DNA of 64,000 bases, from NCBI RefSeq assembly GCF_035594765.1, contig NC_085844.1, positions 204,864,107 through 204,928,106 on the forward strand, given 5' to 3'. The DNA is from Anolis carolinensis. Lineage: Eukaryota. The position numbers and the translations under genes were made by a program. Under the pieces are notes generated by a model, which worked only from the letters and a program-made list of their open reading frames with translations, was not told the origin of the DNA and searched no databases. Numbering within the stretch: position 1 is the stretch's first letter; each line of letters opens with the position of its first letter. Positions 23,275-54,897 of the stretch are shown here, in pieces.

Positions 23275-23484
23275 AGCCATGACAGTTAAAGTGGTGTCAA
23301 AATGTATCAAAATTCAGTGTAGTTGCAGCATTAAAGGACACATCAGTCAGCAAGTTGAGCAAGGCATTTTATTTTCCCTCTCAAACAAGAAAAGAGCAAT
23401 AGGAAACATTGAAAAAGAACTAAATCCAGTGCCGCCTAGTGACTAAACTGCATAATGATAAACAAGAAGTTTAAATATGCAGTA
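23275..23484 (+). repeat. Inverted duplicate of 50282-50495
   Basis: AAATCCAGTGCCGCCTAGTGACTAAACTGCA...AAACAAGAAGTTTAAATATGCAGTA is matched in reverse complement at 50282-50345. Confidence 0.9.
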
Positions 23485-23781
23485 CATGTTGAATATCCCT
23501 TATCTGAAATGCTTGGAAGTAGAAGCTTTTGAGATTTTGAAATTCCTCTATTTGCACATATGTATATAATTAGAAATGGAGATGGGACCCAAATCTAAAC
23601 ATGAAACTCATTTATGTTTCATAGACACACTGATAATGTTTTAAATAATTTTGTGCATGAAACTAATTTTGTTAACACTAAACCATCAGAAAACAAAGAT
23701 GTCACTATCTCAGACAATCATGTGGGCAGGTTTGGATTCTGAAGTATTTCAGAATGCTGGATAAAGGATGCTTAATTTGCA
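23483..23781. mobile_element. Old Tigger-like MITE
   Basis: TA-CATGTTGAATATCCCTTATC...GATAAAGGATGCTTAATTTG degenerate TIRs. Confidence 0.65.
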
Positions 23782-23978
23782 TATATGTCTGTGTACTGGA
23801 CTCAGCTGTAACCTGGTGCATAGGCAAGTAATTAATTACAGATACTGCATATGTTCTTCACTGCAGAAGAACATGCGGGTCAAGAATAGGTCTCCACAGC
23901 CACCTACGCATCCACCGCCAAGACACTACACCTGGAGGACCATCATCCTTGAGCTCCGAGGGATCACCTAAGTAAGTA

Positions 23979-24302
23979 AGTAAGAGTCTCACTTATCCAA
24001 GCCTCGCTTATCCAAGCTTCTGGATTATCCATGCCATTTTTGTGTCAATGTTTTCAATATGTTGTGATATTTTGGTGCTAAATTCGTAAATACAGTAATT
24101 ACAACATAACATTACTGTGTATTGAACTACTTTTTCTGTCGAATTTGTTGTATAACATGATGTTTTGGTGCTTAATTTGTAAAATCATAACCTAATTTGA
24201 TGTTTAATAGGCTTTTCCTTAATCCCTCCTTATTATCCAAGATACTCGCTTATCCAAGCTTCTGCCGACCCGTTTAGCTTGGATAAGTGAGACTCTACTG
24301 TA
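23979..24302. mobile_element. Mariner-type MITE (TIR CAGTAGAGTCTCACTTATCCAA)
   Basis: TIRs at both ends with a TA flank. Same family at 25943, 42909 and 52875. Confidence 0.88.
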
Positions 24303-24339
24303 TAATAAATACCTTATTATAACGAGTTTCTGTAACACA

Positions 24340-24453
24340 ATCAGGCTGAAATGTTGCAGCCCAGAGGATTTCTTGTTCTTTAGTGAAAGGGGGAAAATAG
24401 CCCATAGCAGCAAAGTGAATCTGTCCAAATGAAGATGACAGTTACAGCATGTT
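24340..24453 (+). repeat. Inverted duplicate of 49010-49133
   Basis: CAGGCTGAAATGTTGCAGC...AGCAGCAAAGTGAATCTGTCCAAATGAAGATGACAGTTACAGCATGTT matches the reverse complement of 49010-49133. Confidence 0.88.
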
Positions 24454-25823
24454 CAGGTCAAGGGTTGTTGTCGTGCACATGCAAATGCTGACACAATCAT
24501 GAAATAATTTGCAATGAAGACCAAGCACTTCCAACTGTGAATTATTAAACAAAAAGTTAACAAAAGTCTTCCTGTCTCCTTTTGGTTAGGGAGACATAGG
24601 GGAAAAAAACTAGTGTGAAATATGAAACTATTTTTGAATGATTAAGCTGTGAGCAGAGTTCTGATCCAACTCAGGCTCCAGTTTTGAGCATATATTGAAA
24701 ATCAATTATCCCTTAATTCTAAAAAGATATCCCTATTCTGCCTTCTTTAAAAGAAGCAAGCTCCTTATCCATGGACTCAGTATCCATGGTTTCACCTACC
24801 TGAGCTCCAAATCTTCTCTAGGTCCTCCAGTCTCATTCTATGTTATATATCAGGCCCAAGTGTAACCCAAATATAGGGCTTGCTATTCTCTGTGGTTTCA
24901 GGTATCAGAGATATTGGAACATATTCTCAGTTGATCAAGAGGATGCACTGTACTTTTAAGATAACTGGATATAAATAAGCAGTGATAGGATGATGCTCTA
25001 GGTTCTGTAATATCCTACTGCTGATCAGTTAGGGATGATTTTAGCAAATCATTCAATTGTCTAATTTTGGGTCACATGACTGCTGCCTTACTTGGGCAGC
25101 AATATATCTTTCCTTGGGAACCCTGAAAGAAGAATGCACTTATTGACTAGATGAAGTTGTACCTCCTTAAAACTCCCGTAATGCTCTCGCAGTGAATATA
25201 ACAATATCAGGATAGGGTCTAGGTATTCATTTCAGCACATGTGGACTAAAATTGCACAGCCTTTATTCCATTCCTTCTCTGATTCTGGAGACCAAGAATC
25301 ATGGAGAGTGGACCCAGAATTGGTAAATGCATATGCTGATATCTAATCCTAAATGAATTGGAACACTAAGGTTTCACACTTGAATGACATTTTAAAGTGG
25401 CTGTTTTATTTAAATTGTATGTTAGATTTATACTTAATAGACCTAGGGTAGAAGAAAACTTAGTGCCTTTATTCCTATATTTTGTTATCTAATTTCTCAC
25501 TTGTCTGAGCTATTATTTTATTTAAACCTGGTTTTTTTCAAAAAAGTAGTAATGTTATAAAAATCAGCAAAGTGAAAATCAGCAAAGTGCAGGCAAATAA
25601 CATTTATTGTATACTCTAATAGACACAGCTTTATACCAAGAACACATTTAAAGCTGGTGTATGGAAACTTCTCATATAGGTACATATTACATGATTATGG
25701 CTCTTACATCAGAGCACATCGAAAGCTGGTGTGTATGTTCAGACCCGGCTTGTGAAGAATGATCCATAGGATACCAATTACCACATCCCAGTTGGCTAGA
25801 GGTCCTCTACCAATTTAGCTGAC

Positions 25824-25897
25824 CTGTTTTTTTGGGGGTTTTTTTTGTAGTTCATCTTGCTGAATTTTAATTTCCTTAGACAGATTGTTCATCACAT
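25824..25897 (-). CDS. TRAF3IP3-like duplicated exon, copy 2 (74 nt): DVMNNLSKEIKIQQDELQKKPPKKQ, phase-shifted by an A8C5A7 expansion
   Basis: Paralogous to 26847-26906 with intact splice sites, but 14 nt longer so it ends in phase 0. Confidence 0.45.
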
Positions 25898-25942
25898 CTG
25901 TAAACGGAACAAAGCAAAGCCGATCATAAGGACACTTGCATG

Positions 25943-26731
25943 TACAGTAGAGTCTCACTTATCCAACGTAAACGGGCCGGCTGAATGTTGGATAAGCAAA
26001 TATGTTGGATAATAAGGAGGGATTAAGGAAAAGCCTATTAAACATCAAATTAGGTTATGACAAAGTGACTGATATAAAAGATATGGACAAGTTAACCTTC
26101 TTATTAAAGAAGAAGGATGGCAGAAAAACAAAAGAGACGGACTGGTCCTGTTTGGAGGATTATTTAAAGAAATAAAGAGACTGTAAACAAGTGAAGGCAA
26201 AAACGACAGAAGAGTAGGAAGAGAGAAGCATTAAGACAGGAAGTCGCCACACACCCCCTATTCTCCCCTCTAACTGACCCGTACCTATCATACCTTAGAT
26301 TCACCCAAACTCCCTTCTCCCTTCCCTTCCCCTTCCTTCCTCCCCATTAGTCCTATCTACATACCCCTCCCTTATCAAAGTCAAAACCTTCTCTTTCCTT
26401 CCCTCACTTTCCACCTCCCCTTCCTCCCTCCTTTCCCTTTGTTTCTCCTTTCCCCCCATCCCCAATGTGTTTTGTTTTGTCAAAATTAATAAAAACTATT
26501 TTAAAAAAAAACAAAAAAAAACATCAAATTAGGTTATGATTTCACAAATTAAGCACCAAAACATCATGTTATACAACAAATTTGACAGAAAAAGTAGTTC
26601 AATACGCAGTAATGCTATGTAGTAATTACTGTATTTATGAATTTAGTACCAAAATATCACGACTACAAAAATGCGTTGGATAATCCAGAACCTTGGATAA
26701 GTGAGTGTTGGATAAGTGAGACTCTACTGTA
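25943..26731. mobile_element. Mariner-type MITE with a nested L1-type insertion
   Basis: TA-CAGTAGAGTCTCACTTATCCAA...TTGGATAAGTGAGACTCTACTG-TA. Confidence 0.9.
26061..26519 (+). mobile_element. 5'-truncated L1-type 3' end with poly(A) and a 20-bp TSD
   Basis: TSD AACATCAAATTAGGTTATGA at 26041-26060 and 26520-26539. AATAAA plus A-tail and a pyrimidine-rich 3'UTR. Confidence 0.85.
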
Positions 26732-26846
26732 CTAGTTATTCTTCCTTTCTTATTTTCTGTTTCTATCTGTACTATTTTCAGTGATCCATAGGACACCAAT
26801 TATAACATCCCGGTTGGCTAAAAATCCTGCCAGCAGTCTAACTGAC

Positions 26847-26906
26847 CTGTCTTTTACAGTTCATTTTGTTGAATTCTAATTTCCTTGGATTGATTGTGCA
26901 TCACAT
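26847..26906 (-). CDS. TRAF3IP3: TRAF3IP3-like duplicated exon, copy 1 (60 nt): DVMHNQSKEIRIQQNEL* (TAA at 26856-26854)
   Basis: ccatttacag|AT...ACAG|gtcagt. NQS aligns with recalled GLLQNQSLQLQEQ. In-frame stop 7 nt before the donor. Confidence 0.65.
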
Positions 26907-27868
26907 CTGTAAATGGAACAAAACAAAGTTGATTGTAACTCAGAACACTTGATTATTATTTTCTGTCTCTATGTGTACTACTGCCCAATTCAAACAATTA
27001 TGGGAAAGAATTCTCATTCACCTAACATTTGCTAAATTGGGCTGAAAGAAGTCTATCCTTGTGGCAGTTACCCACATTTCAAGTTTGCTGAAAACAACAA
27101 CATGCTCAGTTGGTCTATTTGTGATCTCTGTTAAAGCAACTTGAGCACATTTAGTAGTAGATCAGATGCAACTCTACATCATTCTGCCAGAAGACCTTCT
27201 CACACCTGGCTTGGAAGTATAGCTTCAAGGACAAAAATAGAAGGCTATGACTAATGGATGTGAATAGATTCATTTATTATTCTGGTCATAATTTATTATT
27301 ATAATAATTTATTATTCAGTGGGACTAAAGAGAAGATGTTTAGATTCTTTCCCTTTATTAATGCAAGACAACAAACAATGTTTGGGGGTCATTTGCTTCC
27401 TATGCATGTATAAAAACCATGGACTAACATGGTACCATATGTTGTTTTTCTTTTCCACATAACACTGCATTCCTGCAGTTTTTTCTTATATCATACAAAT
27501 GTCATTGAAATGTACAATATAGTAAATATTATTCATAATGTGCCATTTTCCTACATGGATACAAACATCTTACACTCATGATTCTTTGAGTTCAGACACC
27601 ACACTTTTTACATGGCACAAAAAAACTAACCATAATTAGAAAACAACTGCCATGTTCAGGTGTAAAGTTACTGACTTATCCCTTTCTCTGTGAAAGTAAC
27701 AGAGGACAATGATTTTAAAGACAGGAGCTTGTAGTAATGATCTCTATACTCCTAAATATTTAAAGACATATGAACCAAATGAAATGTTAAAATTAAGGCA
27801 TTATACAACAGATAAACTGTGTCTGTGGGCCTGCACGGTCATCATTAACCATCCTCTTGAATACTTAC

Positions 27869-27919
27869 CATGCAAATATTTAATTGTTGCACTCTCTTTT
27901 TCTTGAGTTTGCAGTCTGT
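27869..27919 (-). CDS. TRAF3IP3: TRAF3IP3-like exon (51 nt): NRLQTQEKESATIKYLH
   Basis: aattccag|AC...CATG|gtaagt, phase 1-1, open frame. Weak similarity to DQLKRSEAEKLTL. Confidence 0.72.
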
Positions 27920-28258
27920 CTGGAATTAATGATTAACTTTTCAGAAATAATACATAATTATGCAAGGCTTTTCTTATAATAGCATCTGCACTAGTTCGAA
28001 AAAGAATGACACCTAGCTCTAACCTACAGAAGTCAAAGGAAAATTCTCCCTACTGGTTTATGCAAATCCTTTCCTTTTCTGAATCCATCTGAGTCAGGGT
28101 TGTGATGTCATACTGCATTAATTATACAGTGTACATACAACCTTAATTGCTACAGAGAAAATTCTGAAGCTATGTTGCAAATAGGTGGTCAGTACCTCCT
28201 CTCTGCCTAAACCTTAGAAGTGTTGTGACCCAGCTTCCCACTTCTACAAATGTCTTAC

Positions 28259-28394
28259 TTTCCACTGCACTGAGATTCTCCACTGAAAGCCTGTTGTCTT
28301 CTTTGACATTATCAGGTTTAGCGGAGAGACTTGTGCATTCACTCTCCAAGTCCTGCAGGTTTTGGTGCAACTGAGAGTTCTGAGTCTCTGGCTG
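28259..28394 (-). CDS. TRAF3IP3: TRAF3IP3-like exon (136 nt): QPETQNSQLHQNLQDLESECTSLSAKPDNVKEDNRLSVENLSAVE
   Basis: NAGNAG acceptor ctctttgcag|cag, donor GAAA|gtaag, phase 0-1. Aligns positionally with the GADSRDLQMNQALRFLENE segment. Confidence 0.82.
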
Positions 28395-29810
28395 CTGCAA
28401 AGAGAACAACCAGAAGAGCAAAGGGCTGGTTAGCAAAATAAATGATGAGTCTGTATGGTTCCTCCATATAAATAAATATTGATCTACACACATACATTTG
28501 AAAAGAGTAAGCCATTTAGTCCCTTAATTTTTTTAAAGGGCTAATTCAATGCGTTAAAAGAGAAAAAAAATGCCAGCTACCATAATGAACATTTGTGCTG
28601 ATCCTTTAAGTGTGCCTCTCAGTGCTTCATCATACTTTTTGCTGATTTGCTTCCAAACACTATCTTAATTTTTAAAAAGGTTTAAAAGTGGCACATTTCA
28701 ATTAGTAGTTGTCTTGCTTATGATGTGGGCATGTCCAGCTCTTTAGGACATATGGAGAAAAGGGGAAAAAAGGGTGGAAACATTCCAACCATAGGGAGAG
28801 GGGAATAATACACGCCTGCTTTGATCACCACAATTCACACAATGATAAAAAGAAATCTCACATTTCATTTAGGAAGAAGTCACTCCAGAATACTATGGAA
28901 AAAGAAGTGAAGCAACACAAAACTTTTGATTGGTAGAAAAGCATCCGATTTCAAAAAGTATGTACAGGAATACCATATTTATTCCTCTTAACATCTTTGC
29001 TCTATCTGGACCAGCCCACAGAATGACATTTTCAGAGATGAAAGCTGGACTTAATATGGTTCCAGAAGATAATAGGCTTTCTAGTCTGCATTAAGCATTT
29101 GTATAGAATCACTTTAAAAATGCTCTGCAAGGGGAAAATTGGCATTTGTTTTTTAAAAACAAAATCCATGTGGGGTTTAAAGTCAGTGTCTATGCTTCTG
29201 GGTCAGAATAGGTGAACAACTTAACCCATTGTTAGACCATATTGCTCAGGATGAGGATTATTAACATGAGAGACCAGGGATGGAAAACAGTAGTAGGTGT
29301 GAGTGCTATTTTTCCTCAAATTCCTCTCCAAATTCTGAAAATGGAATCTTCCCTAGAAATTGACAGAAAGGTGATGTCTGATTTATTTTGGAGTCCCAAA
29401 TTTGCATGTGTGGGATCCTCTAAAATAATCTGTTGTGGCCCTTGTAACACAATTGTCAGGTTTTTGGCCAAAACACTGGAGGGGAGGTGCTGGGGACCAA
29501 AGACAATCTGGTAGGCCATATGTAGCCTAAAGGCCATGTAATTTCTACGGTGGTTTAAGCTTATTCATCTTGATGTTCGACAGTGCACCCAATTTAAATT
29601 CTGTTTTTGAGTATTCAAGGCTATAAATCCTAGCTGCTATGGATATTCTACATAACTCCTGGATAACTCCTGGAATGCTGGTTGGGTCTCTGGTGTTTGG
29701 CACAAAACAAAAAAATGCCAAGGGACCTTCAACCTAGAACAGCCTTTTAGTTGCTTGCATGAAAAAAAAAATCTAGAACACAATCCTATACAGAGATATA
29801 AGGAATTTAC

Positions 29811-29948
29811 CTGAAGTTTGTTTTCCAAGATGTAAAGCTTGTTTTCTTGTTCGGCATGCTTGCCAGGCTGCTGGCTCCAGTCTTGTTTTAATATGTTGCA
29901 CTGTTCTTTCCAGAGGGTACACTCTTCCTGTACAATAGCTAAGTTTCT
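29811..29948 (-). CDS. TRAF3IP3: TRAF3IP3-like exon (138 nt): RNLAIVQEECTLWKEQCNILKQDWSQQPGKHAEQENKLYILENKLQ
   Basis: cctactag|AGA...CAG|gtaaa. Compare RSLALAEQKCEEWRSQYEALKEDW...SKLQ. Confidence 0.92.
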
Positions 29949-31612
29949 CTAGTAGGTGATATGAGAGTCAGGTATAAACTTGTGAGAATCAGGGCATACG
30001 CAAGTTACTCTCTGGATGATTACTTCCAGAAGCCCCTAGGCAGTATGGCCATTAGACTTCTCCAAATATTGTTAGGCATATGTTAGCCATAATTAACAAA
30101 TATGCTTTGTGGAAAGTCAAGTAGCCCTTTCCTATACCACACACATTCGTTCTGGTGTCTGTTTGCCTTTACTTAACTATTTAACTCAACTTCTTAGACC
30201 GTTGCTAAGATTCATGCCTATGGCCTGAAGAGTTCTGTTTGGGCAAGGAGCTGCAGATACTTGCTGTTTTTAAACTGCCAAGAACACAATGAAGTAGGCT
30301 CTGAAGCCATTGGTGGTCATTAATTGTATGATTTTCATTTCTTTGTGACATATGTTTCTCATAGACAAAGAGCTGTGCAAAACTCAAAAAGTTCAAACAC
30401 CATTACAACAACTCTTCCTTCGCTAGAAGTATTCTCTAATATTCTGTGTCCCCTATTTATTAGCTTTTTATATGGTGCCATCCAGTGGAGAGAAAAAAAG
30501 ACTGTAGGGTCAAGAAAATATATCCAATGTATTTCTGGATTTATTTCTCATCCCTTTCAACACCATACTGAGAATTGTTTTGAATAGCAACTAGCATAGT
30601 AAAGCAGTAATTTTTCCAAATTTGGGGGCAAAGGAGCTATTCATTCATTGTCAACAAACTAGTTTGGTTTGCATGTATAATAATATTTTGCTGTGGGAAG
30701 ACAGCATCTTGTTTCCTTTTTATTAAGTAATATTTATCATTGGACTGTCTAAGAACATTGAAATCAGTAATTCATGAATATATAATGAAATAACATCGCA
30801 CAACATTATTAAACAGTAACAACAGCAATGATAATAGTAATATATAATTCAGAACAATTAGAAGCTTTTTAGTGCTCAAGACATGAAATAAATATTCTTC
30901 AAAGGAAAATATCAAGAAAATGCAGGCTTTGCAGCATGCCAGATTAATATAGGTCATTTACAACCTAGGATTCTATTTCAGAACTTTACAATGCTGTACA
31001 TTGATTCAAAGGGTTAATGGATAAATATATTCATTCATGCATTCTACTGCATGAACATTGCATGGTGTTTTCCTGACAGCTCTCCTTTCCTTCATGAAAT
31101 CAGATCTGGGGCTTAGAAAGGATGGCAAAGATGTGCTCTGAACCAGAGACTCCTGGATTTGTAGCTTAGCCACTCAACCACCTTTCTGCAACGGTGGCAT
31201 TTTTCCCCTATACATATTATTCCCTCCACTGGATATGCTCCTGTTTTTCAGCATGGATATATTTCTGTCTATGACATGAAAAACAAATGCTGAGAAGGGA
31301 GAAAGAACATTTTCAGTTGACAGAATGGAAATCTGTGAGCATTAGAAATGAAATGTTACTACCAGCAGCAAACCCCAAACCTCCATCTACTGCGCAACAG
31401 GAGATGATGCCTCAAACAGAAAGAAACACAGTGATCTGCTTAAGAAGATATTGATCAATCCTGCTCTGAAAACATACTTTGCTCTTGCTGCTTTCAAGTT
31501 TCACCTTCCTGGTTCACTTCATATGTAACAAGATACCTGCATGTCAGATGGAGAATGGGACGAAAATTCTGCCCAGTAGCCTAGAGGCACTCTGCTGAAA
31601 TTTCATACCTAC

Positions 31613-31753
31613 CTGGACATTCTCAAGTTGTCTTTCTAATTGCAGTTTCTCTTGAAGCAACTTCTGAAGAGACTCTTTCATTTTCTGCTGATAGTTCTGC
31701 TTTTGATCTTCTAGATCCAGAATAACTCTTTGTAAGTTCCGTTCTGAGTACTT
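31613..31753 (-). CDS. TRAF3IP3: TRAF3IP3-like exon (141 nt): KYSERNLQRVILDLEDQKQNYQQKMKESLQKLLQEKLQLERQLENVQ
   Basis: ttttctctag|AAG...CAG|gtagg. Compare KYSPWGMKKVLLEMEDQKNSYEQKAKESLQKVLEEK. Confidence 0.93.
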
Positions 31754-33048
31754 CTAGAGAAAACAACAGAAAACTAGAGAATGATTCCTAGTGTTAATGT
31801 ATTGGGTTGATACACTAAGGTGAGCAATTTTAACAATATTGTATTGTTTTATATATAATCTCATTCTTTTCTTTTTTTTCTCCTTCATCATTGTCATCAT
31901 CATACATGCTCTCAGCACTGCTGGCCATTCCATCCTACATTTGGCTCTAGCCTTTTTGGAGATCGTGAGGGACTTTTCAAAACCAGTAGTGACTGTACGC
32001 ATGAACTTCTACTAGGTCATCTCCTCATACCAATAAGCATGAAACGAGGTTTTTAGGTTTCATTTTTGGGTATATGTGTAGCAAGACTAGTGGGAAAAGA
32101 CAGGGATCCCTCCGACCAGAGTATAGGTTCTTCACATTTTGTCTTTTTTGGGATTAGGCTTACTGAAATTGATAAGACATCAGTAATGAACAATTTAACT
32201 ACCAAAGACCTCACTGGAATTCAGTCATGGTTTAATAATTTGAATTCAACTCATTAAAAGCAAGAATAGCCCTAATTTATCAAGATAGGAATCCTATCCT
32301 GGATAATTTTTGTACTGAACAACTTAGTAAAATCATTTAGGGAGATTGATCCAATTATTCCCATTAACACAAGATTAAAACTGGAGCATAGCAGCAACAT
32401 TTTAAATCCTTATGGCTTAGGAGCATTTTTTCTTGTAATACAGGCCACAAAATCCAGCCATAATTATTTTTAACATAATTATTTTCAAAAATTCTGCTCT
32501 TATTATCTTTAAAGAAAAGCAGTGATGACATTCCTTTTGATTTCAAACAAAACATTAGTATGCTGCTTTCTCATGCACTTTCAAGACAGTCAAATGTGGT
32601 GATGTTTCAGCAATGATCATATTCATTGGCACACAGACCACAAATACTACAGTATTTTTATTTACAGCTCTAACTGCATTCAAGAAGCCATCCTGAGTCC
32701 CTTCAGGGAGAGAGGGCGGGTTAAAAATAAAGTTTTTACTTTTTCCAAAAAAAATCCTTTTAGATTTGAAATCCCGCATCAAACATTTTGGAAATGCCTA
32801 GCATTACTCTTAAGGAGTCAATGGACAACTAGAAAGAGCTAGGGATTTTACTAGAAGCATAAAAGGGTCAGCTTTGTACTCAGAGTCTGAGGTTCATCAC
32901 CCTTAAACCAGAGGATGCCCGTGTTATTATATACCTTATCTATAACAAGACTCTGTCAGAATGCAGAAGTTCGCTATGTCTGACATACATGCCCAAGCTA
33001 TCTCTGCTTTGAGAAACAGGTCTTTTCCTTTTTATCTGATGATGTTAC

Positions 33049-33120
33049 CTGAGAGCAAATCAGAAGCTGATTTGTCAAATTATCCACTCTGTCTTTGAGT
33101 TTGTCTTCGTTTAAGTAATC
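33049..33120 (-). CDS. TRAF3IP3: TRAF3IP3-like exon (72 nt): DYLNEDKLKDRVDNLTNQLLICSQ
   Basis: ttcttgtcag|GAT...CAG|gtaac. Compare GQLNEDKLKGKLRSLENQLYTCTQ. Confidence 0.92.
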
Positions 33121-34176
33121 CTGACAAGAAAAGAAAGTTGTAAATTTTGTATCACATTCTAAACATTGGTCAAGAAATGAATATATACAAATGTGTCCAT
33201 ATGTTGGAGTAGACAAAGTCAAGCCTGTGGGCCACATATGGCTCATAGCTATTTTTGTGGCTTTCTTTGTCCCTAACAAAAGGTATTGCCCACATATCCC
33301 AGCCAGACCACTATTTACTGCATCCTTATACACACATACATCAAACGTTGTGGAATCTCAGAATAAACATAAAAAGCTACTTTGAAAGCATTGTAACCAA
33401 GAAAAGGAAATGAAAATAGAAAAAGAAAATAGAATATTTTGATTAAAATGGTCCCCAAACTCCTTAGATAGCATTCGGGGGTGGGGGGTGCACCATGTTT
33501 TCGCTGTTCAGAGCCACTCCAAAAGAAGACTCTCTTAGCCTTAAAACAGTTGGAAAGGGGCATGGATGTGGCCAAACCGCTTCCAAATCCCCTATGAATG
33601 TGAAGGGGTCATTTTGAGCAATAAAGATAGATGTTGTACATCTTTATTTATTGCCCCAAATACATAACTTGCCTACTGCCATTCTATATTGTATTTCCAA
33701 AAGATAACCAATAATAGGTTAGAGTCCAATATTGAGTTAAAATATTGTTTGCTCTTTGATTAATGGCTACTAGTGCTACCAGTCAAAAGCTATTGCGCAG
33801 CTATTCTGTCTTTCTTTTCATAGTAGACATTATGTAATAAGAAAAAAGAAAGATAGGAGAAGAGATGGGAAAATACAGGGAGGTTACAAATGAAATATGG
33901 CATTACCTGAACAAGACAGGGTAACTACACAATAAAAGTCTAGCTTGGTTTATTTAAGGTGGGTTGATGATCTGTATTAAAGCAAAGGCCTGATACCATG
34001 GACAAATCTTGCCTTCTGTATGTGTAAAAATGCAACTTTGATTCTCATTTTATTGAAAAAGGAACTGACTAATTTCCTATTTTATAGCACAGGATTTTCA
34101 ACAGGCATTGCCTGAAACACTGAATGCAGATAACAGCTTGTGGGTTTTTTTCCTAGATGCTGTTGTACTTAAAAAG

Positions 34177-42222: not shown

Positions 42223-42355
42223 CTCCTCCAGTGGCTTTCTTTTTCACATTCTACACTCTGTCCAAATTCTACTGTATTCCAGATGCTGTGTTATATCCCT
42301 TAATGATAAAACTTTAAATGCATTTACATTCACTTTGAAGGTGTAAAAGCTGAAC
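42223..42355 (-). other. Putative 5'-UTR exon of the TRAF3IP3-like gene
   Basis: gtagtttttcag| acceptor and GAG|gtaagc donor, 0.8 kb upstream of the ATG exon. Also present in the inverted copy near 52002-52140. Confidence 0.5.
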
Positions 42356-43901: not shown

Positions 43902-44037
43902 TATGTTTCTGTAATTTAAAACCCTTTTTTGGTTTGGGATGAAGGCATGGTTCGCCAGCTACATTCATGCTGTGGATATGAAAACATGGACAGTCACACC
44001 CCATTAAATGAAATGGAGGCGCTTTTACTAGCATTTT

Positions 44038-46185: not shown

Positions 46186-46196
<11 letters not shown>

Positions 46197-46243
<47 letters not shown>
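46197..46243. repeat. (TA)n microsatellite
   Basis: Read directly. Confidence 0.95.
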
Positions 46244-46244
<1 letters not shown>

Positions 46245-48906
46245 CACACACCTCTCTCTCGTCTAAGTGCTTGGACTGGCAAGAAACAATTGATGGTACT
46301 TATGAAATGCAATAATTCAAAGTAAAGCAAATACCCATGTTTTCTGTTGAACACCCCCACATGTTCATCATTTGCCACAAAAGAAAATACAAACGCTATT
46401 GCTGACATCTTGGCATTAATGTGAATTTTCCTCCAAGAATTACTTAATTGTGTAAAACCTTATATCCCTTATATTTACACAACACTCAACACCATATTGC
46501 AACAGAACTGCAAGATATAATGAAAGCAAATCAATAACATAAATATGACATTGCATTAAATGTCCAAACAGTATGGTCTTTGATGTACAGTGCAGTCAAT
46601 GAGATGTAAGTCTATTGGAATCAGAAGTTTTAGTTGCTGCGAAGAGGTACTAATTCAGATGACTGAAAAGGTCATCACTACTAAATTCCTTCTGCCAGAC
46701 CTTCCTAATGCTTCTGCTAGCTTCCTTGCATGGTGCCTATTTTTGAAAATTTTTAAAAAAAAAAAACCATTCATGGGGACATCATATTCTTTGCCCTTAT
46801 TACTGAAACTCATGTACTCAAGTGTTTCTCACAGAGGTCCACAGAGTAATTTATAATGGGTTTTTAACTAGACATAAACAGCTTTGCAACCAATCTGGAT
46901 TTCCATTTTAATGTATTTACTATAAAAACCCATTTTTAAAAGCTAACTACATTTTGTCTAGTTTTAATATATGCAGTGGACAAATATATTGAGATTCTAC
47001 AGAACTTCCCTCTCCCAACTATGGACTGAGTCCTATTTCTGCATTTTAATTTAGTGACCCTGCAATGCTGCCCTTAGACTCTTAAGCGAAATAAATTGCA
47101 GTTTAGACTGCTTTCTAAACTCATTCCAACAAGCTCAGAATAATTGCTTCCTTTCTTTACTCTAGATTAAAACTCACAGCTCAGGATGCTGAAGTTCTAC
47201 CAAATGAAACCACCATCCTCTGACTTTTCAAGGCCAAGAGAGAACCCTTTATAGCAAAAAAGGCAATGGCTGACTCTGTGGTGTTGAGATGGACTGTACC
47301 ATTTCAGATTAGAGGTGAATGTCCTCTTATGCTTTTAGGAATAACAACCCTCTGATTTCCTGTAAATCAGAAGTGGAACTACAAGCAATGGACTGGGTCC
47401 TTCTCTCTGATGAAGTAGTTTGTTCATAGAGTTGCAGAAAAAGGATTAATGGAGTAGGCTCATTAAAAATGCAACCCCATGGCACAGCCTGAAATGGTAC
47501 ATCCCACTCTACCACTTTAGGATGATTCCACTTTATTCTAAAACAGGTTGTGTGGAAAGATTGGTTCTCCAAAACTGTTGAATTGAACTGCAATTCCAAA
47601 TATTTCTCATTGTTGGCTATGGTGAGAAGAGATCAGCACATTGCTTACTTCTGTTCTACTGCATTCATAGCTCAGACCAGGCATGGGCAAACTTCGTCCC
47701 TCCAGGTGTTTTGGACTTCAACTCCCACAATTCCTAATGGCCAGGCTCTTAGGAAATGGCCCAGACCAAAGTGAAATGTTACCCAGTAAGAGGTAATTTC
47801 AACTTGCAGTAAGAGGTGGAAATTTCCTGCAATTCCTGTATAAAAGTAGGAGTAGAAAACCATTTAGATTTCCTCTACCAGTGTCCCATCTTGAATTACC
47901 AACCTCTAAGATGTTTTGTAATATATATCTGGAGTTGTATTGTAATTGAATATTTGTTTTTATTGTATGCAGACCATCCCACTATACAACATATATGAAT
48001 AAGCAACTTCCTACCTGGTACCTTTTTGTTTTTTGCTTTTGTGTTTTAAGGGAAGCCCTGTGTGCAATTGCTTCCTCCCATGCATTTTAATATATGTGCC
48101 AGATGGAGCTAAACCACCTTGGAACCCATCTTTTTCCTCCTCCAGTTATGGCAAGTAACCCCATTACTGTGTGTTATGAAAAACTGTCAGTATTGATTAA
48201 CTGAACAAATCACGTGTATTTGGATGTTACAAAACAAACAATTACAATTACTACCCTGACTATGTAGATGTATATCTCAGTCATATTACCCACTCCACAG
48301 TTTTGTTTCAGTTCTTGTTTAGAGGCTATTGGTTTTTTCCTTAATGTTGAAAAAACTATATTTTTATAATATAAAAACAACCAATGTTTAATACTCAGTA
48401 GTGATTATGCAGAGGTGGTTGTAATCTCTTCTCTCACTACCCTTGGCATCCGAATTACTTGCTTACTAATAACATAAAATAAACCCATAAGCACTTTTTT
48501 CACAGACAACTATCTGCTAAGCCCCAGCTCTATACCTTTCAGAGTTTCTGTATTAAGCAGCTACTTGAAATATCTGAAACTCATTTCGAGCAAGAAAAAT
48601 GAGAAATATTTGCTCAATTTATTGAGCACATTTGGGCAAAATGATGGGGCCTTATTATTATATTATGGGGCTTCCTTCTCTCTTGGGCCAATATATTTGT
48701 CTCGGATAAATGCAAATGCCATTAATCTTTCGGCACTGTTGTGCTGCCCAATTTAAGCAGTAGGAATATTGCGCGTTCATCTTCCAGCATCACGTCAACA
48801 GTGCTGGGAAGTGGCTTGGAGAAAAGGTTACTTTTTAAGGCTGTATTTGCTTTCTATAGACGGAGAATTAAAATGGAAGCTTGCTACTAACAATTGGAGT
48901 TCTTAC

Positions 48907-49420
48907 CTTGCCTTGCCGTTTCCGTGGCAGGTCTGGATGAGCTCTGAGAAGCTCAGCTCTGCTGTTGCTGAAGCACAAATTAAAAGATGCCTGTTTAGTT
49001 ATCAAGTACTAACATGCTATAACTGTCATCTTCATTCGGACGGATTCACTTTGCTGCTCTGGGTTATTCCCCCCCCCCCCCCCGCCCTCACTAAAGAACA
49101 GGAAATGCTCTGAGCTGCAACACTTCAGCCTGGTTAGTTCCTCTCTTCCCCCTTTCATTCTGTCATATTCTGATATGACAAGGGAGTGACAGGAAACCCA
49201 GAACTTTGTAAGCAGGTTCATGTTGTGGTCAGTCAAACCCGCTGTTGTTGGGTGGTCGACATGTCCATTGATATCACGGAGACTCCAGAAATATCTCTTT
49301 GCACACTTCACGTTATCAGCACTGGCACCTTGAACCTCACTGTCACGCTGTGAAAATGTGGTTGGCACTCTGGGACCAAATTTAAGTGTGATACTCATGG
49401 GAAGAAGAACTTTCTGCCTG
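48907..49420 (-). promoter_or_regulatory. Candidate promoter/first non-coding exon of the TRAF3IP3-like gene
   Basis: Strong donor AAG|gtaaga at 48907/48906, locally raised CpG, ETS-like (ACAGGAAAT/ACAGGAAAC) and RUNX-like (TGTGGT) motifs. Function is inferred only. Confidence 0.35.
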
Positions 49421-49711
49421 AGTAGAAAATAACTTGTATTCGTTTTTTAATATTGTAGCATGCATGCATGTGAATAGCCGTAACTTTGCCAACTTTGAAG
49501 TTCGGTGTCTTTAATGTGAGTGACATCTAAGGTGCACCTACACTATCAAATTAATGCAGTTTGACTTCATTTTGACTTCCGGGGCTCAGTGCTATGGAAT
49601 CTTGGGATCTGTAGTTTGGCATGGAAAGCTAAAGCTACAACTCTCACAAATCCACAACACCGGGCCATAGCAATTAAAAATGTGTCAAACTGCATTAATT
49701 TGACAGTGTAG

Positions 49712-49937
49712 AAAGGAAATTCCACCTGAACATTTGGAAGAACCTCCTGACCATGAGTGCTGTTCAACAGTGGAACTCTCTGCCTTGTAGTGTGGTGGAA
49801 GCTCCTTCCTTGGAGGCTTTTTAACAGAGGCTAGATTGCCATCTGTCGGGGATACTTTGATTGTGCTTTCCCTGGATGGCAGGGGGCTGGACTATATGGC
49901 TCATATGGTCTCTTCCAACGCTATGATTCTTTGATTC
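49712..49937 (+). mobile_element. CR1 LINE 3' end fragment
   Basis: GGAGGCTTTTTAACAGAGGCTAGA...GGTCTCTTCCAAC.CTATGATTCT tail. Confidence 0.85.
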
Positions 49938-50283
49938 AGGTACATTTTTTAAAGTATAACCAGCCAAACATATATATGAGTTTCACTTTGGATAACATAG
50001 GGAAGGGTTAGCACCCCTGTGGTGTTTGCGGTCTGTATCCCTGTTCAAAAGATTTCACCTTACTTTCTGTCCCTGTGATAATTGGAGTTTGAAAAAATCA
50101 ACTTGTTGTGGAAACAAGGATCGGTGACAAAGCTCCAGTTGAGATACCTTTGCACCATGATAACTCTTGGGAGTGAATTTCTCTTCCTAGGGGTAGATTT
50201 CTCTCACTTCCTGTTGTCTCACCCCTGTTCTTAACTATGAGTCATTGGTAAGTGGGATGTTTGTAACTAGGGAACTGCCTATA
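49936..50283. mobile_element. Tc1/mariner-Tigger-type MITE, left end missing
   Basis: Same internal sequence and right TIR (GTAACTAGGGAACTGCCTATA). Confidence 0.78.
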
Positions 50284-52140
50284 CTGCATATTTAAACTTC
50301 TTGTTTATCGTTGTGCAGTTTAGTCACTAGGTGGCACTGGATTTAGTTATTTCTCAGCCGAGTCTGATGTTTCTTGTTGCTGTTTACTTGTTTAAGAGAA
50401 AATAAAATGCCTTGCCCAACTTACTGACTGACGTGTCCTTTAATACTGCATCTACACTGTAGAATATAATTTAACACCACTTTAACTGCCATGGCTAGGT
50501 GGCAGCATCAAAATGCGAGTTTAAAAGTGTGGCAAACGATACCAGAACCTGTCTGCAAGTCCACACACAGACCTGACAGTCCCGGAAAATGGTCCCCCAC
50601 TGTCCTCACTCCTTCCTTTGAAGTGAATCAAGATGGAGAGGGGGATGGAGGACATCTGGCAGAAGTTTTTTTTAAAAAAATCTCCAAGAGGTGCTGGACC
50701 TCATATGGGTACATGAGAAGATCCCAATGTACACACAAGCGGATTTCTTATCTCTCTCTTCACCCAACTGTTAATTCAAGCTCTGATTAATATGTGTATT
50801 ATAAGGAACAAAGGAATGGCTGCAAAGAGTTCTAATTGCTTTGCAATTGTGCTTCCCTTTAGTCACCTGTGTGTCCATGGCTCCATTTTTCACAGCCCAA
50901 TCAGCTGTTTTGAATTTAAACCAGATGGACAGTGTACAGTTACTTTCTGGGAATCAATAGTATTTTGGAGAGTCTCTGAACTCTTTCTCTAGAGCCTCCA
51001 TTTTTACAATTCAAATCCTTGATTTAAGGGTTAACCTGGGGGTCTGGGACGCAGGCCAGCCAGGGCTTGCTATTCTTGAAGAGTGAATCCACAATTGGCT
51101 GCAGCAGAAGAAAACCAGTCCTCCAACTTTCCTGAAGCCAAGGAAGTGGACAGAAAAACAAAACAACTCAAATAATGTTTGGTATTGCCCTAAGGATATC
51201 TGATGGTATTGTACTTTTTTTCTACTTTCCGTTTCACCAACCCCTTGTTCTCTCAGCCTTGGGATAAGGAATAAAATATTTAGCTTCGTCTGACCCAAAT
51301 CTCAACACTTTATGTTTCTGCATGTGAAGAGCCCAAGACATCTTTACAGCATTTCTGGTAGGAGTTGCAGCTCCCCTGAGCCATATGACCAGTAGCAACA
51401 CTATTGGGTGAGTTTGCCAGGTAGACTTCTCTTTTTCCAATTATGTTGATTGGAGAAAGATAAAAACCTCCCTTGGACCTTGGAGATAATGAGCTATGAG
51501 ATGAGCTAATGTAGAAAGTATCAATTGTAATTGAAACTGAGCACACAGAAGGTGTAAGATAATAAGGTGTGAGATATGAGGTAAAATCACCTTAGCACTT
51601 TTTGACCAATTATGCTAAACACTGACTTCAGAGGATGTCTTTGCACTGCTTTACCTATAAAGTATATGTACTTGGCTGTGCCATCTTTTTGGCACCCATA
51701 GTTATGTGTTTTCTGTTTTTATAATTTTTTACTTGTTTTCCAAAATAAAATTCTTCTCTCTTGAAATTAATAATGCCTGGTTGTTGACTGCTGTGTTTTA
51801 AAACCCCACCTTTAAGAGATCAGGATGGCAATATATCATATACCACAAAGTAGGGATGTAATGTTTTGTCAAAGGCACCCATTCTTCTGACAGAATTATA
51901 GTACTACCCACTTAGGCTTTTTGGATTATAGTCAGATAAAAACAGAAAAACAAATAAGTAAAAGCAAAATTAATCTCTTGCCCTGAGCAGTAGTTTATCA
52001 GGTTCAGTTTTTACACCTACCGGTACTTCAAAGTGAATGTAAATGCATTCAAAGGTTTATCATTAAGGGATATAATACAGCATCCAGAATAGAGTAGCAG
52101 TTGGACAAAGAGGGGAACATGGAAGAGAAAGTCACTGGAG

Positions 52141-52143
52141 TAC

Positions 52144-52193
<50 letters not shown>

Positions 52194-52440
52194 TTTAAAA
52201 ACTTTATTTTTATTCCACCCTACCTCCCCAAAGGGACTCAGGGTAGCTTCCAATTATAAAAGGCATACATTCAATGCCTGAACATAACAAGCAATAAACA
52301 CATAATTACAAAAGTTGACAACTCAACATATATAAGCAAAGTGTCCGTTTCCCAAAGCCAGCAAGTTTCCTTTGGGGCAAAGACTGGTCAGTGCTCAAGC
52401 TGTCTACTGAGCTAGTGGGCAAATGGCATGAATATGATGA
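52141..52440 (-). mobile_element. LINE 3'-tail insertion with a (TAA)n microsatellite
   Basis: Absent from the paralogue near 42220. Shares CCCCAAAGGGACTCAGGGTAGCTT with LINE tails at 57550 and 62540. Confidence 0.7.
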
Positions 52441-52874
52441 TAAGCACAGATCAGTTAAAATAGTGGCACAACTATCCATTGTTAAAATGAACTTTGCCTT
52501 CAGGAATGTGTGAATCGGTTGCTTCCAGGAATAGCAAAGATTTTTTAAACTGTTCTTTTCATAATTCCCAAATAATGCACATAAGTAGAAAATGCAAATG
52601 TAAAACAGGAGTTGGGGGAAGATAGCCCGCTGTCTAAAATACCCAAAATTATCAGTGGTCCTGAGGATGGTACAGCAATTGTTCTACTCTAAAAATGAAG
52701 CTAAAATAGACACTACATTATAATACCTTTGTAGTTCAGCAGTATATTAATTTTATTTATTCAACAGATTGATTGGCTCAGTTTACTTTTTCTCAAGAGT
52801 GGGACTCAAGACAGCAGCTAATTTTATTGCACAGGTCGTTAAAAATAATTACAAGAGTTACATGTAATTTCACT

Positions 52875-53219
52875 TACAGTAGAGTCTCACTTATCCAACA
52901 TAAACGGGCCGCAGAACGTTGGATAAGTGAATATGTTGGATAATAAAGAGGAATTAAGGAAAAGCCTATTAAACATCAAATTACATTATGATTTTACAAA
53001 TTAAGCACCAAAACTTGTTTTACAACAAATTTGACAGAAAAACCAGTTCAATACGTGGTAACGCTATGTAGTAATTACTGTATTTACGAATGTAGCACCA
53101 AAACATCGCAATGTATTGAAAACATTGACTACAAAAACATTGACTACTAAAAGGCAGACTGTGTTGGATAATCCAGAACGTTGGATAAGCGAATGTTGGA
53201 TAAGTGAGACTCTACTGTA
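52875..53219. mobile_element. Mariner-type MITE, complete
   Basis: Perfect TIRs and TA TSD. Absent from the paralogous minus-strand segment. Confidence 0.9.
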
Positions 53220-53221
53220 TT

Positions 53222-53517
53222 CAGAGCCGGCCCTAGGTATTTTTCAAGTGTAGGCAAACAGAATTTTGCACACACCCCCCCCCCCAAAAAAAACTATCAC
53301 TGAAAAATAAAAGCATTGGATAAGTGAAAATGTTGGATAATAAGGAGAGATTAAGGAAAAGCCCATTAAACATCAAATTACATTAAGATTTTACAAATTA
53401 AGCACCAAAACATCATGTTTTACAATAAATCAACAGAAAAAGCAGTCTCGACTGTGCCCCCGTATGTTTGGCGCCCGAAGCGACCACTTAATTCGCCTCA
53501 TTGTTGGATCGGCTCTG
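53222..53517. mobile_element. Non-autonomous hAT element with an 8-bp TSD, carrying a mariner-MITE fragment
   Basis: TSD ACTGTATT at 53214-53221 and 53518-53525. TIR CAGAGCCG...CGGCTCTG. Confidence 0.88.
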
Positions 53518-53675
53518 ACTGTATTTTCCATCATTAACAAGGCACTGAAAAAATAATTGAAACATTTAATTGGAGGAATGATTCTTCTCTAAGCTAACAT
53601 TACACCAGGAATTTTCTATATTTTCTTGGGAAATATTACTGAAGGCCAAATATCAGAATAATACTAAAGTTGTAG

Positions 53676-54152
53676 TGAAGGGACCATAAGCCAGAAAATA
53701 GTAGACTTTTGCATATATAGCTTTGCCTCAGCTTATATCATATTAGCTTCATATAGACAAAGTAAGCTCTTTGTATGAGCCAAAGTAACAAAGGACCAGT
53801 GCCTCTCCCTTTCTCTTAGGCTGGTACCTTCTCCAGAAAGTTCCAAGGCCAAATGCTAGCTTGAGACCAACAAGTGAGATCATAGACACCACTTGTGCCA
53901 AAGAGGTGTGGAGGTGAAGAAGACCCTCAGTAATTGGTCAAGTTTAGATAAGCCGACATATATGTCCTTTGTTTGCGACGCCACGCTTCGCGGCAGCCAT
54001 TTGCAAGTACAAACTTTTTGGGGTGTGTACGGCTGTCCCACCTTCTCATAGCTATGTGAAAATAAACTTTGCTTTTGTATTCTCACAAGACTGGGTTTTC
54101 TGTCTCATTGCCTCCTGTGCCAGAACTCCTTTTTGAGATAAATTGTCTTACA
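53676..54152 (+). mobile_element. Solo LTR (477 bp, TG...CA, 4-bp TSD GTAG)
   Basis: GTAG|TGAAGGG...CTTACA|GTAG, with AATAAA at ~54061. The empty site is visible in the paralogous segment near 41635-41645. Confidence 0.85.
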
Positions 54153-54391
54153 GTAGCTTCTAGAATAAACTTGCGAATGTTGTGATTGGTTTGGAAACTG
54201 AAAGTACTACATGGTAGAAAGTCTGGTAGGAACTCAGAATATTTGTCCACAAGAGAATATTTGATATTATAATATTGCATCCTCAAAGTGATGCTATTTG
54301 CACACTGTCATGGAGAAATACTTTCTTCACAGCGATTCACAAAATGTTATACCCAATATAATACTGATTTGTTTACGTTTAATTTCCACAG

Positions 54392-54697
54392 GAAAATATA
54401 TCTCTGGTATATTTAGAAGTTGTGCCCTGTGGACTTCTGCAGTGAGCAGCATAATTTTTAGATTTTGCAAATCGCATGGTCAGCACTGCCCTCATAATGA
54501 GTTACGATGACAAATATGAGCCCCTGCAGGAGAGGCATAAAATCCATCTTAAAAGGAAAAGCTGGGCCAAGTCCCTTCTTAAGGATAAGCACCAAAACAA
54601 AGGAGCCAATAAGCATCTCCAAAACCCACAACAAAAGGAATTTCTCAGAAGGAGGAATGTAAGAATCAAACAGCGTTGTTATCTCTTTGTCTACTGA
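54392..54697 (+). pseudogene. Decayed plus-strand copy of the TRAF3IP3-like first coding exon
   Basis: Encodes SYDDKYEPLQERHKIHLKRKSW...QKEFLRRRNVRI, paralogous to 41085-41366. The start ATG appears as ATA, and a deletion of roughly 95 nt removes the exon end and donor. Confidence 0.85.
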
Positions 54698-54897
54698 TCA
54701 GGTAATATAGTAGGATCATCAATTAAAGCCCCACTCAAAACATGTTAATTTAGAAATCAAAACCAGTGTATTCAATGGCCTAATTTATTACTGCCTTTAT
54801 ATGGTCTATGTTTTAGACACGACTTCAGTCTTTATAAACCACTTGAAATCTGTAGCAATATGGCAAAAATAGACCTGTTAGCCTATTTGCCACATTG

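What the first reader, a model, noticed from the sequence alone, without database searches (positions are those of the whole stretch)
23275..54794. TRAF3IP3-like gene flipped inside the remains of its own plus-strand copy
Seen: an 11-exon in-frame TRAF3IP3-like gene on -, convergent with HSD11B1. Three non-TE segments have inverted partners: 23275-23484 with 50282-50495, 24340-24453 with 49010-49133, and 51836-54794 with 40925-42523. Read on +, the remnants fall in the gene's own 5'-to-3' order (upstream flank, candidate exon 1, UTR exon plus ATG exon). Known (recalled): human TRAF3IP3 follows HSD11B1 on the same strand. Inference: an inverted duplicate landed within the 5' region of the ancestrally oriented copy, and that copy then decayed.
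Basis: partly seen in the sequence, partly recalled or inferred. Interest (0 to 1): 0.85.

Follow-up and report, generated by a model that had tools for sequence, protein, structure and literature searches.

The report
Anole TRAF3IP3 flipped and truncated
In anole lizards the immune adaptor gene TRAF3IP3 was turned around by an old inverted duplication that left broken copies of its front end on both sides and cut off the exons for its membrane anchor, so anoles seem able to make only a tail-less form of the protein.

Summary
The window is Anolis carolinensis chromosome sequence. All three inverted pairs are real (BLAST E 1e-28 to 1e-104, 78-91% identity). The minus-strand gene is the annotated TRAF3IP3: 404 aa, 11 coding exons, each 100% identical.

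Outgroups settle the polarity. In a turtle, Phrynosoma and Sceloporus, TRAF3IP3 lies tail to tail with C1orf74. In A. carolinensis and A. sagrei its tail faces HSD11B1, while C1orf74 is unchanged.

The duplicated flank is larger than reported: X+A, window 19067-24453, has an inverted partner upstream of the flipped gene. Trees and distances place the duplications before the carolinensis/sagrei split.

The left junction (24453/24454) lies in the intron after coding exon 11, so the last three exons (second coiled coil and membrane anchor) were left behind. One of them survives as a wreck beside C1orf74 in A. sagrei. A. carolinensis instead keeps, outside the window, a decayed plus-strand copy of the ATG exon to coding exon 5 beside C1orf74.

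However, 51831-54880 is probably an extra copy rather than the body of the ancestral gene, and its absence from A. sagrei is unexplained. This is a known kind of rearrangement and a new, well-resolved vertebrate case.

The scan had already noted the truncated protein (s1-559199).

The parts
14789..15001 (+). Last coding exon of HSD11B1. This is context: the left neighbour, whose tail now faces the tail of TRAF3IP3.
   Evidence: E 6e-17 to residues ~218-282 of solved 11-beta-HSD1 chains. Further HSD11B1-like exons lie in the ORFs at 8321-8731 and 11447-11770.
19067..22883 (+). X: intergenic block upstream of the ancestral TRAF3IP3, plus copy. Its inverted partner X' lies outside the window (L005 18960-19831) and, in A. 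sagrei, directly upstream of the flipped gene.
   Evidence: Searches show collinear inverted matches to L006 13022-16220 and L005 18960-19831. In the tree, carX' groups with sagX' at 100% bootstrap, against carX with sagX.
23237..24453 (+). A later SINE-like insertion lies at 23983-24302.
   Evidence: Searches show the pairs with 50496-50282 and 49135-49011. One search shows collinearity with the A. sagrei upstream region, from L006 16585 to L002 1441. K2P for A versus A' is 0.124.
24450..24457 (.). J1: left junction between relic A and the 3' end of the inverted block. TGTT could belong to either side.
   Evidence: A/A' homology ends at ...AGCATGTT; homology between A. carolinensis and A. sagrei on the gene side ends at the same base (L002 28253); the position maps about 1.3 kb into the Phrynosoma intron after the exon for aa 388-409.
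24454..50674 (-). Inverted block holding the working TRAF3IP3 gene: 3' flank, 11 coding exons, intron 1, candidate exon 1 and 5' flank.
   Evidence: collinear with A. sagrei L002 throughout (30 blocks, 18.4 kb, K2P 0.113); collinear with the Phrynosoma upstream region and intron 1.
26857..41366 (-). Coding region of TRAF3IP3 (404 aa). Exons: 41366-41085, 40309-40151, 39748-39689, 38117-38085, 36210-36115, 33129-33049, 31753-31613, 29948-29811, 28400-28254, 27950-27870, 26907-26857 (stop). There is no second coiled coil and no membrane anchor.
   Evidence: exon-by-exon tblastn with P0024, 100% where unambiguous. Pfam PF27557 CC1_STRIPAK; all annotated isoforms are 404 aa or shorter.
25848..25898 (-). 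Tandem duplicate of the terminal coding exon. The repeat unit is 25760-25941 against 26782-26951. It is also present in A. sagrei.
40924..42526 (-). B': the part of the working gene that is copied elsewhere. It covers the upstream exon region, the ATG exon and the start of the next intron.
   Evidence: K2P for B versus B' is 0.152 over 1374 nt.
49011..50674 (-). A': 5' flank and candidate exon 1 of the working gene, the partner of A.
   Evidence: orthologous to A. sagrei L006 16405-17079 and L002 518-1983.
51831..54880 (+). B: plus-oriented dead copy of B'. It has ATG changed to ATA, a 1-nt frameshift and a 100-nt deletion that removes the end of the ATG exon and its donor. It also has SINE-like insertions at about 52850-53520 and an unmatched stretch at 53675-54181.
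   Evidence: It keeps an ~85-nt intron piece (54795-54880) that A. sagrei has and the A. carolinensis gene has lost. In the tree it branches before the carolinensis/sagrei split.
54917..56628 (.). Palindromic transposon-like element directly after B. The rest of the window, to 64000, is transposon-rich and has no counterpart in A. sagrei.
   Evidence: arms 55069-55539 and 56304-55819 (87%), with outer arms 54917-55071 and 56628-56476; only repeat-type matches to A. sagrei.

Best explanation
**Ancestral order.** Before A. carolinensis and A. sagrei diverged, the locus had the order still seen in Phrynosoma, Sceloporus and a turtle:

HSD11B1 (+) - X - A (flank and exon 1) - intron 1 - B (ATG exon region) - C (coding exons 2-11) - D (last three exons: second coiled coil and membrane anchor) - C1orf74 (-)

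**The event.** One complex break-and-rejoin or template-switch event produced:

X A | C' B' I' A' X' | B C ... D

This is an inverted copy of the gene from its upstream flank to the intron after coding exon 11, set into intron 1 of the original gene. It has the same topology as an inversion of intron 1 flanked by large inverted duplications, as in the staggered-break model.

**What survived.**
- The inverted copy kept a promoter region and 11 coding exons, and it survived.
- The original copy had its exon 1 separated from the rest by the insert, and it decayed.
- A. carolinensis keeps relic A at 23237-24453. It also keeps a stop-ridden plus-strand copy of the ATG exon to coding exon 5 beside C1orf74, outside the window.
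- A. sagrei keeps only the wreck of the first orphaned D exon beside C1orf74.

Because the inverted copy stops short of D, anole TRAF3IP3 ends after coding exon 11 and has no membrane anchor.

**Shown:** the polarity, the shared left junction, the age relative to the species split, the orphan exon and the decayed copies.

**Inferred:** that all of this was a single event, the mechanism, and that the segment 51831-54880 is a further copy made at about the same time.
For: **Identity.** The window is A. carolinensis CM069370.1. The gene is P0024.

**Polarity.**
- Mauremys has TRAF3IP3 (+), C1orf74 (-) and IRF6 (-) in that order.
- Phrynosoma has C1orf74 1.4 kb past the TRAF3IP3 stop, convergent.
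- Sceloporus has the two genes convergent and 670 nt apart.
- In both anoles TRAF3IP3 and C1orf74 are on the same strand, and the tail of TRAF3IP3 faces the HSD11B1 side.

**Inverted duplicates.**
- A/A', B/B' and X/X' are documented.
- In the X tree the copies group by copy rather than by species, at 100% bootstrap.
- In the B tree the two working genes group at 99%. Placing B as sister to the A. carolinensis gene is rejected (AU 0.005).
- Paralogue K2P distances are 0.12-0.19, against 0.108-0.121 for orthologues.

**Break inside the gene.**
- Anole homology to the Phrynosoma and Sceloporus intron stops about 1.3 kb after the exon for aa 388-409.
- It stops at the same base in both anoles.
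- The next exon (aa 408-458) with its flanks survives at A. sagrei L006 10961-11356. It matches Sceloporus at 70% over 413 nt (E 1e-57), carries a stop and a frameshift, and starts 154 nt from the C1orf74 stop, in the ancestral orientation.

**Decayed plus copy in A. carolinensis.** DNA homology to window 36122-41685, introns included, lies at L005 11563-17072. In-frame stops sit in both recognisable exons.

**No anchor found.**
- No membrane-anchor exon was found anywhere in the window, L005, or the contiguous A. sagrei interval L002+L006.
- All annotated anole isoforms are 418 aa or shorter.
Against: - The segment 51831-54880 does not fit a single clean event. It lies between A' and X', which are contiguous in A. 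sagrei, yet it is as old as the other duplicates.
- A. sagrei has no copy of A beyond the shared junction.
- A. sagrei has a 190-nt intron piece inverted next to the orphan exon. This implies at least three breaks in that one intron.
- The decayed copy looks somewhat older than the other pairs in one alignment (0.30 against 0.18). In BLAST-block distances it does not (0.172).
- The order in which B and the decayed copy arose is unresolved.
- No read or long-molecule evidence for contiguity across the junctions was obtained.
- Genome-wide copy number of the paired segments was not measured.
- About 5.2 kb between the window end and L005 was not seen.
Confidence: 0.7

Rival explanations
1. A plain inversion of the gene, with breaks upstream of X and in the intron after coding exon 11, duplicated only the left breakpoint region (X+A). 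The plus-oriented copies (51831-54880 and the decayed copy beside C1orf74) arose afterwards as separate inverted duplications of the flipped gene's 5' half.
For: The A. sagrei layout (X | C' B' I' A' X' | small inverted intron piece | orphan exon | C1orf74) needs no plus copy of B-C at all. One-sided breakpoint duplications are common in the staggered-break model (PMC1885836).
Against: Both plus copies diverged from the working gene before the species split (K2P 0.15-0.20 against 0.11). A. sagrei must therefore have lost them under this model too, which adds events. The decayed copy also sits exactly where the original gene body is expected, between X' and C1orf74.
Confidence: 0.2
2. One reading: 51831-54794 is the surviving front part of the ancestral plus-strand gene, directly following the inserted inverted copy.
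For: The orientation and order (A, then the inverted block, then B) match the gene's own 5'-to-3' order. B is about as old as the other duplicates.
Against: B lies between A' and X'. These two are contiguous in A. sagrei and collinear with the contiguous plus-strand X-A of A. carolinensis. A second plus-oriented copy, which reaches on to coding exon 5, lies beyond X' next to C1orf74. Nothing gene-like follows B up to 64000.
Confidence: 0.08
3. The paired segments are dispersed repeats or an assembly artefact, and there was no duplication event.
For: The first ~70 nt of pair 1 resemble a short repeated element. Transposon copies lie inside and beside the segments.
Against: Pair 3 contains a coding exon. 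Each segment has only its expected partners in about 190 kb of anole sequence examined. The partners are collinear with the orthologous A. sagrei locus. The copies differ by 12-20%, so they cannot be collapsed haplotypes. Twenty runs from eight studies hold 79-89% of the sampled words of 22900-28800.
Confidence: 0.02

Closest known systems
Drosophila inversions flanked by inverted duplications of unique sequence (staggered-break model; Ranz et al. 2007, PMC1885836)
   Same: An orientation change relative to outgroups, with ancestrally single-copy sequence from the breakpoint regions present as diverged inverted duplicates at the two ends. One copy of each duplicated gene piece decays. A gene can be left coding for only one of its isoforms.
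   Different: The duplicated stretches here are far larger (at least 5 kb and about 17 kb, against at most ~1.9 kb in that study). The single-copy inverted middle is only part of one intron. At least three breaks fall in one intron. There is an extra third copy of the ATG-exon region. The host is a lizard.
Human complex structural variants with paired duplications around an inversion (dupINVdup, DUP-TRP/INV-DUP), attributed to replication template switching. Recalled from my own knowledge, not checked here.
   Same: Alternating orientation of copied segments, short microhomology at a junction (TGTT at J1), and three copies of one segment.
   Different: In the typical triplication the inverted copy is the middle one. 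Here the order is inverted, direct, direct. Those are recent variants in patients, whereas this is an old rearrangement fixed between species.
Short annotated TRAF3IP3 isoforms of other squamates and the mouse mutant lacking the transmembrane domain
   Same: Sceloporus X2 (418 aa), Python X2 (404 aa) and Elgaria X2 (414 aa) also end near the same exon. The anole protein corresponds to such a tail-less product. In mice the mutant lacking the anchor is cytosolic and fails to rescue thymocyte development (PMC4516800).
   Different: In those species the short form coexists with a full-length anchored form (for example 532 aa in Sceloporus). In anoles the exons for the anchored form are gone or wrecked.

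Membership tests
TRAF3IP3 (T3JAM) orthologue | Sequence identity to annotated TRAF3IP3 and the CC1_STRIPAK coiled-coil domain | tested here: met
   Exon-by-exon tblastn gives 100% to P0024. PF27557 is on record for the product. The protein is 57-66% identical to other lizard orthologues.
TRAF3IP3 (T3JAM) orthologue | Position between HSD11B1 and C1orf74/IRF6 | tested here: met
   HSD11B1 lies in the window. C1orf74 lies 15 kb past the window end on the same record. The turtle shows TRAF3IP3-C1orf74-IRF6.
TRAF3IP3 (T3JAM) orthologue | C-terminal second coiled coil and transmembrane tail anchor | tested here: not met
   The protein ends after coding exon 11. No match to the last three exons of Sceloporus, Phrynosoma, Podarcis, Zootoca or Pogona was found in the window, L005, L002 or L006, apart from one wrecked exon in A. 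sagrei. All annotated isoforms are 418 aa or shorter.
Inversion with breakpoint inverted duplications (staggered-break type) | Orientation reversed relative to outgroups while the flanking genes are unchanged | tested here: met
   (outgroups) against (anoles).
Inversion with breakpoint inverted duplications (staggered-break type) | Inverted duplicates of ancestrally unique sequence at both ends, in the order L-S1-S2'-M'-S1'-S2-R | tested here: inconclusive
   S1 = X+A and S1' = A'+X' are found in both species or as a composite of the two. S2' is the gene body, and S2 is the decayed copy beside C1orf74 in A. carolinensis only. The extra copy at 51831-54880 and the small inverted intron piece in A. 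sagrei do not fit the simple scheme.
Inversion with breakpoint inverted duplications (staggered-break type) | Duplicated segments are not dispersed repeats | tested here: inconclusive
   Only the expected partners occur in about 190 kb of anole sequence. Genome-wide copy number was not measured. Read depth could not be obtained.
Inversion by ectopic recombination between inverted transposon copies | The same repeat family in inverted orientation exactly at the two breakpoints | tested here: not met
   The SINE-like copy at 23983-24302 lies inside A and is absent from A', so it was inserted later. J1 joins unique exon-1 sequence to unique intron sequence with 4 nt of overlap.

The most novel reading that the evidence does not exclude
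Anoles are natural carriers of a TRAF3IP3 that cannot be membrane-anchored. The rearrangement removed the tail-anchor exons from the only working copy in the common ancestor of A. carolinensis and A. sagrei. The Golgi and lysosome-anchored functions known from mice have therefore been lost, rewired or taken over by another protein in this lizard clade.
Probability: 0.6. Interest if true: 0.6.

Novelty: new member of a known kind. Interest (0 to 1): 0.5.

Why it matters
This gives a base-level reconstruction, in a vertebrate, of how one local inverted duplication can flip a gene, kill the parent copy and fix a truncated product. The relics are split between two living species, so each species preserves a different part of the record.

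The lost part is the transmembrane anchor. In mice that anchor is needed for Golgi localisation, MEK recruitment and thymocyte development (PMC4516800). Anoles therefore offer a natural test of what the soluble form can do on its own.

The shared junction at 24453/24454 is also a simple presence/absence marker for dating the event within Dactyloidae.

Tried and rejected
- **Rfam scan of the window:** no family reached threshold.
- **Read laying:** No contiguity or depth test was possible.
- **Sceloporus and Podarcis TRAF3IP3 look-ups by exact protein:** not on record. Sceloporus was reached through C1orf74 instead.
- **Search for the last three TRAF3IP3 exons in the window:** nothing. The idea that they lie on the plus strand after 54.8 kb is rejected for the window.
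- **My first reading of a splice donor at 41156:** wrong. The exon runs to 41085.
- **A shared deletion in B and the decayed copy as a sign that they are sister copies:** rejected. The two deletions have different ends.
- **B copied from the A. carolinensis gene after speciation:** rejected by the AU test.
- **Transposon-mediated ectopic recombination:** not supported.
- **Spliced protein model:** not built.
- **Human sequence:** none was fetched or compared.
- **Literature search for TRAF3IP3 plus Anolis:** one unrelated paper.

Full report
**Identity of the window.** Translated searches with lizard TRAF3IP3 proteins found through a library search show that the minus-strand exons between 41366 and 26857 match Anolis carolinensis TRAF3IP3 isoform X1 (P0024, 404 aa) at 100%. 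The exact-protein look-up places the gene on CM069370.1 of GCA_035594765.1. Locus L001 is identical to window 51366-16854 in reverse, so window position w equals record position 204864106 + w. The plus-strand exon at 14789-15001 is the last exon of HSD11B1. Every comparison was exon by exon or used database proteins.

**The observation.** Self-BLAST confirms the three inverted pairs at the stated places, with E values from 7e-28 to 1e-104. Probes from each segment find only the segment and its partner in the window. The start of pair 1 overlaps a short repeated element. Pair 3 includes the ATG exon. The plus-strand copy has ATA in place of ATG, a 1-nt frameshift, and a 100-nt deletion that removes the exon's last 56 nt and its donor.

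**Polarity.**
- In Mauremys the order is TRAF3IP3 (+), C1orf74 (-), IRF6 (-).
- In Phrynosoma, C1orf74 lies 1.4 kb past the TRAF3IP3 stop on the other strand.
- In Sceloporus the two genes are convergent and 670 nt apart.
- In A. carolinensis, C1orf74 is on the minus strand 15 kb beyond the window end.
- In A. sagrei the two loci overlap into one contig.

In both anoles TRAF3IP3 and C1orf74 are on the same strand, and the tail of TRAF3IP3 points to the HSD11B1 side. TRAF3IP3 alone is therefore flipped, in the anole lineage. The strand of HSD11B1 in the outgroups was not examined.

**The duplicated flank is larger than reported.** The A. sagrei region upstream of the flipped gene (L006 13022 to L002 1441) is collinear, in inverted orientation, with window 19067-24453. 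That stretch covers block X plus relic A. A. carolinensis has its own X' outside the window (L005 18960-19831). In a tree of the X copies, carX' groups with sagX' at 100% bootstrap, against carX with sagX. The inverted duplication therefore predates the species split.

**One break lies inside the gene.** Mapped on the Phrynosoma and Sceloporus genes, anole homology runs through the exon for aa 388-409 (the anole terminal exon) and about 1.3 kb into the following intron. It stops at window 24453/24454, which equals L002 28253, the same base in both anoles. In A. carolinensis the other side of this junction is the end of relic A, and TGTT could belong to either side.

The next ancestral exon (aa 408-458) survives in A. 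sagrei at L006 10961-11356. It matches Sceloporus at 70% over 413 nt (E 1e-57), is in the ancestral orientation, starts 154 nt from the C1orf74 stop, and carries a stop and a frameshift. A 190-nt piece of the same intron lies inverted beside it and is not a repeat. About 1.7 kb of the intron and the last two exons are gone.

The anole gene therefore lacks the second coiled coil and the anchor. No trace of these exons occurs in the window, L005, L002 or L006. All annotated isoforms from two assembly generations are 418 aa or shorter.

**A third copy outside the window.** Beside C1orf74 in A. carolinensis, on the ancestral strand, lies a decayed copy with DNA homology to window 36122-41685. It includes intron pieces, so it is not a retrocopy. 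Both recognisable exons carry stops (L005 14626-14431 and 11651-11562). It lies between X' and C1orf74, which is where the body of the original gene is expected.

**Ages.** Distances over BLAST blocks:

| Comparison | K2P |
|---|---|
| Orthologous carolinensis-sagrei | 0.108-0.121 |
| A versus A' | 0.124 |
| X versus X' (within each species) | 0.149 and 0.183 |
| B versus B' (carolinensis) | 0.152 |
| B versus B' (sagrei) | 0.178 |
| Decayed copy versus gene | 0.172 and 0.195 |

In the tree of the ATG-exon region the two working genes group at 99%. Both plus copies branch earlier, and making B the sister of the A. carolinensis gene is rejected (AU 0.005). All the duplicates are thus of similar age and somewhat older than the species split.

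**Model.** The simplest account is one complex event that gave X A | C' B' I' A' X' | B C ... D. Each lineage then lost different parts of the disrupted parent copy. This has the topology of an inversion with inverted duplications at both breakpoints (PMC1885836), but with very long duplicated stretches and extra breaks.

**What does not fit.**
- The copy at 51831-54880 lies in a ~19.5 kb, transposon-rich block that splits A' from X' in A. carolinensis only, yet it is as old as the rest.
- A. sagrei has no relic A beyond the shared junction.
- The order in which B and the decayed copy arose is unresolved.
- A plus-oriented copy of window 18394-18981 sits between X' and the decayed copy.

These points are listed in the notebook. 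They keep a multi-step rival alive.

**Function.** Exonic divergence between the two anoles (p = 0.076) is only modestly below intronic divergence (about 0.10). The central coiled-coil exons are the best conserved. The frames are open in both species. In mice the transmembrane domain is required for membrane and Golgi localisation and for function in thymocytes (PMC4516800). Other squamates have annotated short isoforms ending near the same exon. The anole product therefore resembles a normal minor isoform that has become the only one.

**Limits.**
I worked beside those places afterwards.
- K-mer presence of 22900-28800 in 20 runs from 8 studies is the only support independent of the assembly.
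- About 5.2 kb between the window end and L005 was not seen.
- Exon 1 and the upstream exon remain unverified for lack of RNA evidence.

Noticed in passing
window 25760-25941 and 26782-26951; A. sagrei L002 26484-26655 and 26672-26836: The terminal coding exon and its flanks are tandemly duplicated in both anoles. In A. carolinensis the used copy (26907-26857) has a stop after ...NEL, while the downstream copy (25898-25848) reads on. In A. sagrei the second copy carries the stop.
   Followed up: partly
window 40923/40924: The working A. carolinensis gene has lost an ~85-nt intron piece. That piece is still present in A. sagrei (L002 10565-10650), in the plus copy B (54795-54880) and in the decayed copy (L005 13911-14037).
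   Followed up: partly
L005 14474/14475 (equivalent to window 41088-41150): The decayed copy has a 63-nt deletion lying exactly between two GTAAGAA motifs of the ATG exon, one internal and one at the true donor. This is a slip between 7-nt direct repeats. The 100-nt deletion in B overlaps it but has different ends.
   Followed up: yes
window 40728-40874, with many copies in A. sagrei L002 (10310-10441, 10711-10848, 21459-21605, 23204-23334, 27586-27693): A ~140-nt palindromic, MITE-like element is scattered through the introns of the gene in both anoles and matches itself in both orientations.
   Followed up: no
window 54917-56628: A large palindromic element with nested inverted arms (87-94% identity) lies directly after B. 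Pieces of it recur at 49775-49937 and 7863-7999 and in A. sagrei and Sceloporus.
   Followed up: no
window 16876-17541 (-) and 59402-60744 (-): Long ORFs (221 aa; 132, 98 and 101 aa) lie in transposon-rich stretches. They look like retroelement remnants and were not analysed.
   Followed up: no
window 23139-23190 and 52144-52193: (TAT)17 and (ATA)17 microsatellites give a near-perfect inverted match that has nothing to do with the duplication.
   Followed up: yes
A. sagrei L002 30683-32208 and 35091-36595: Block X on the HSD11B1 side is itself partly duplicated in tandem in A. sagrei. There are two copies of the stretch equivalent to window ~20000-21600, and the equivalent of 16527-18523 lies between them.
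   Followed up: no
window 23527-23782; Phrynosoma L003 4645-4921: A ~250-nt piece in the middle of relic A, and in the A. sagrei upstream region, matches Phrynosoma intron 1 in the opposite orientation. It is either a conserved repeat or a further small rearrangement.
   Followed up: no
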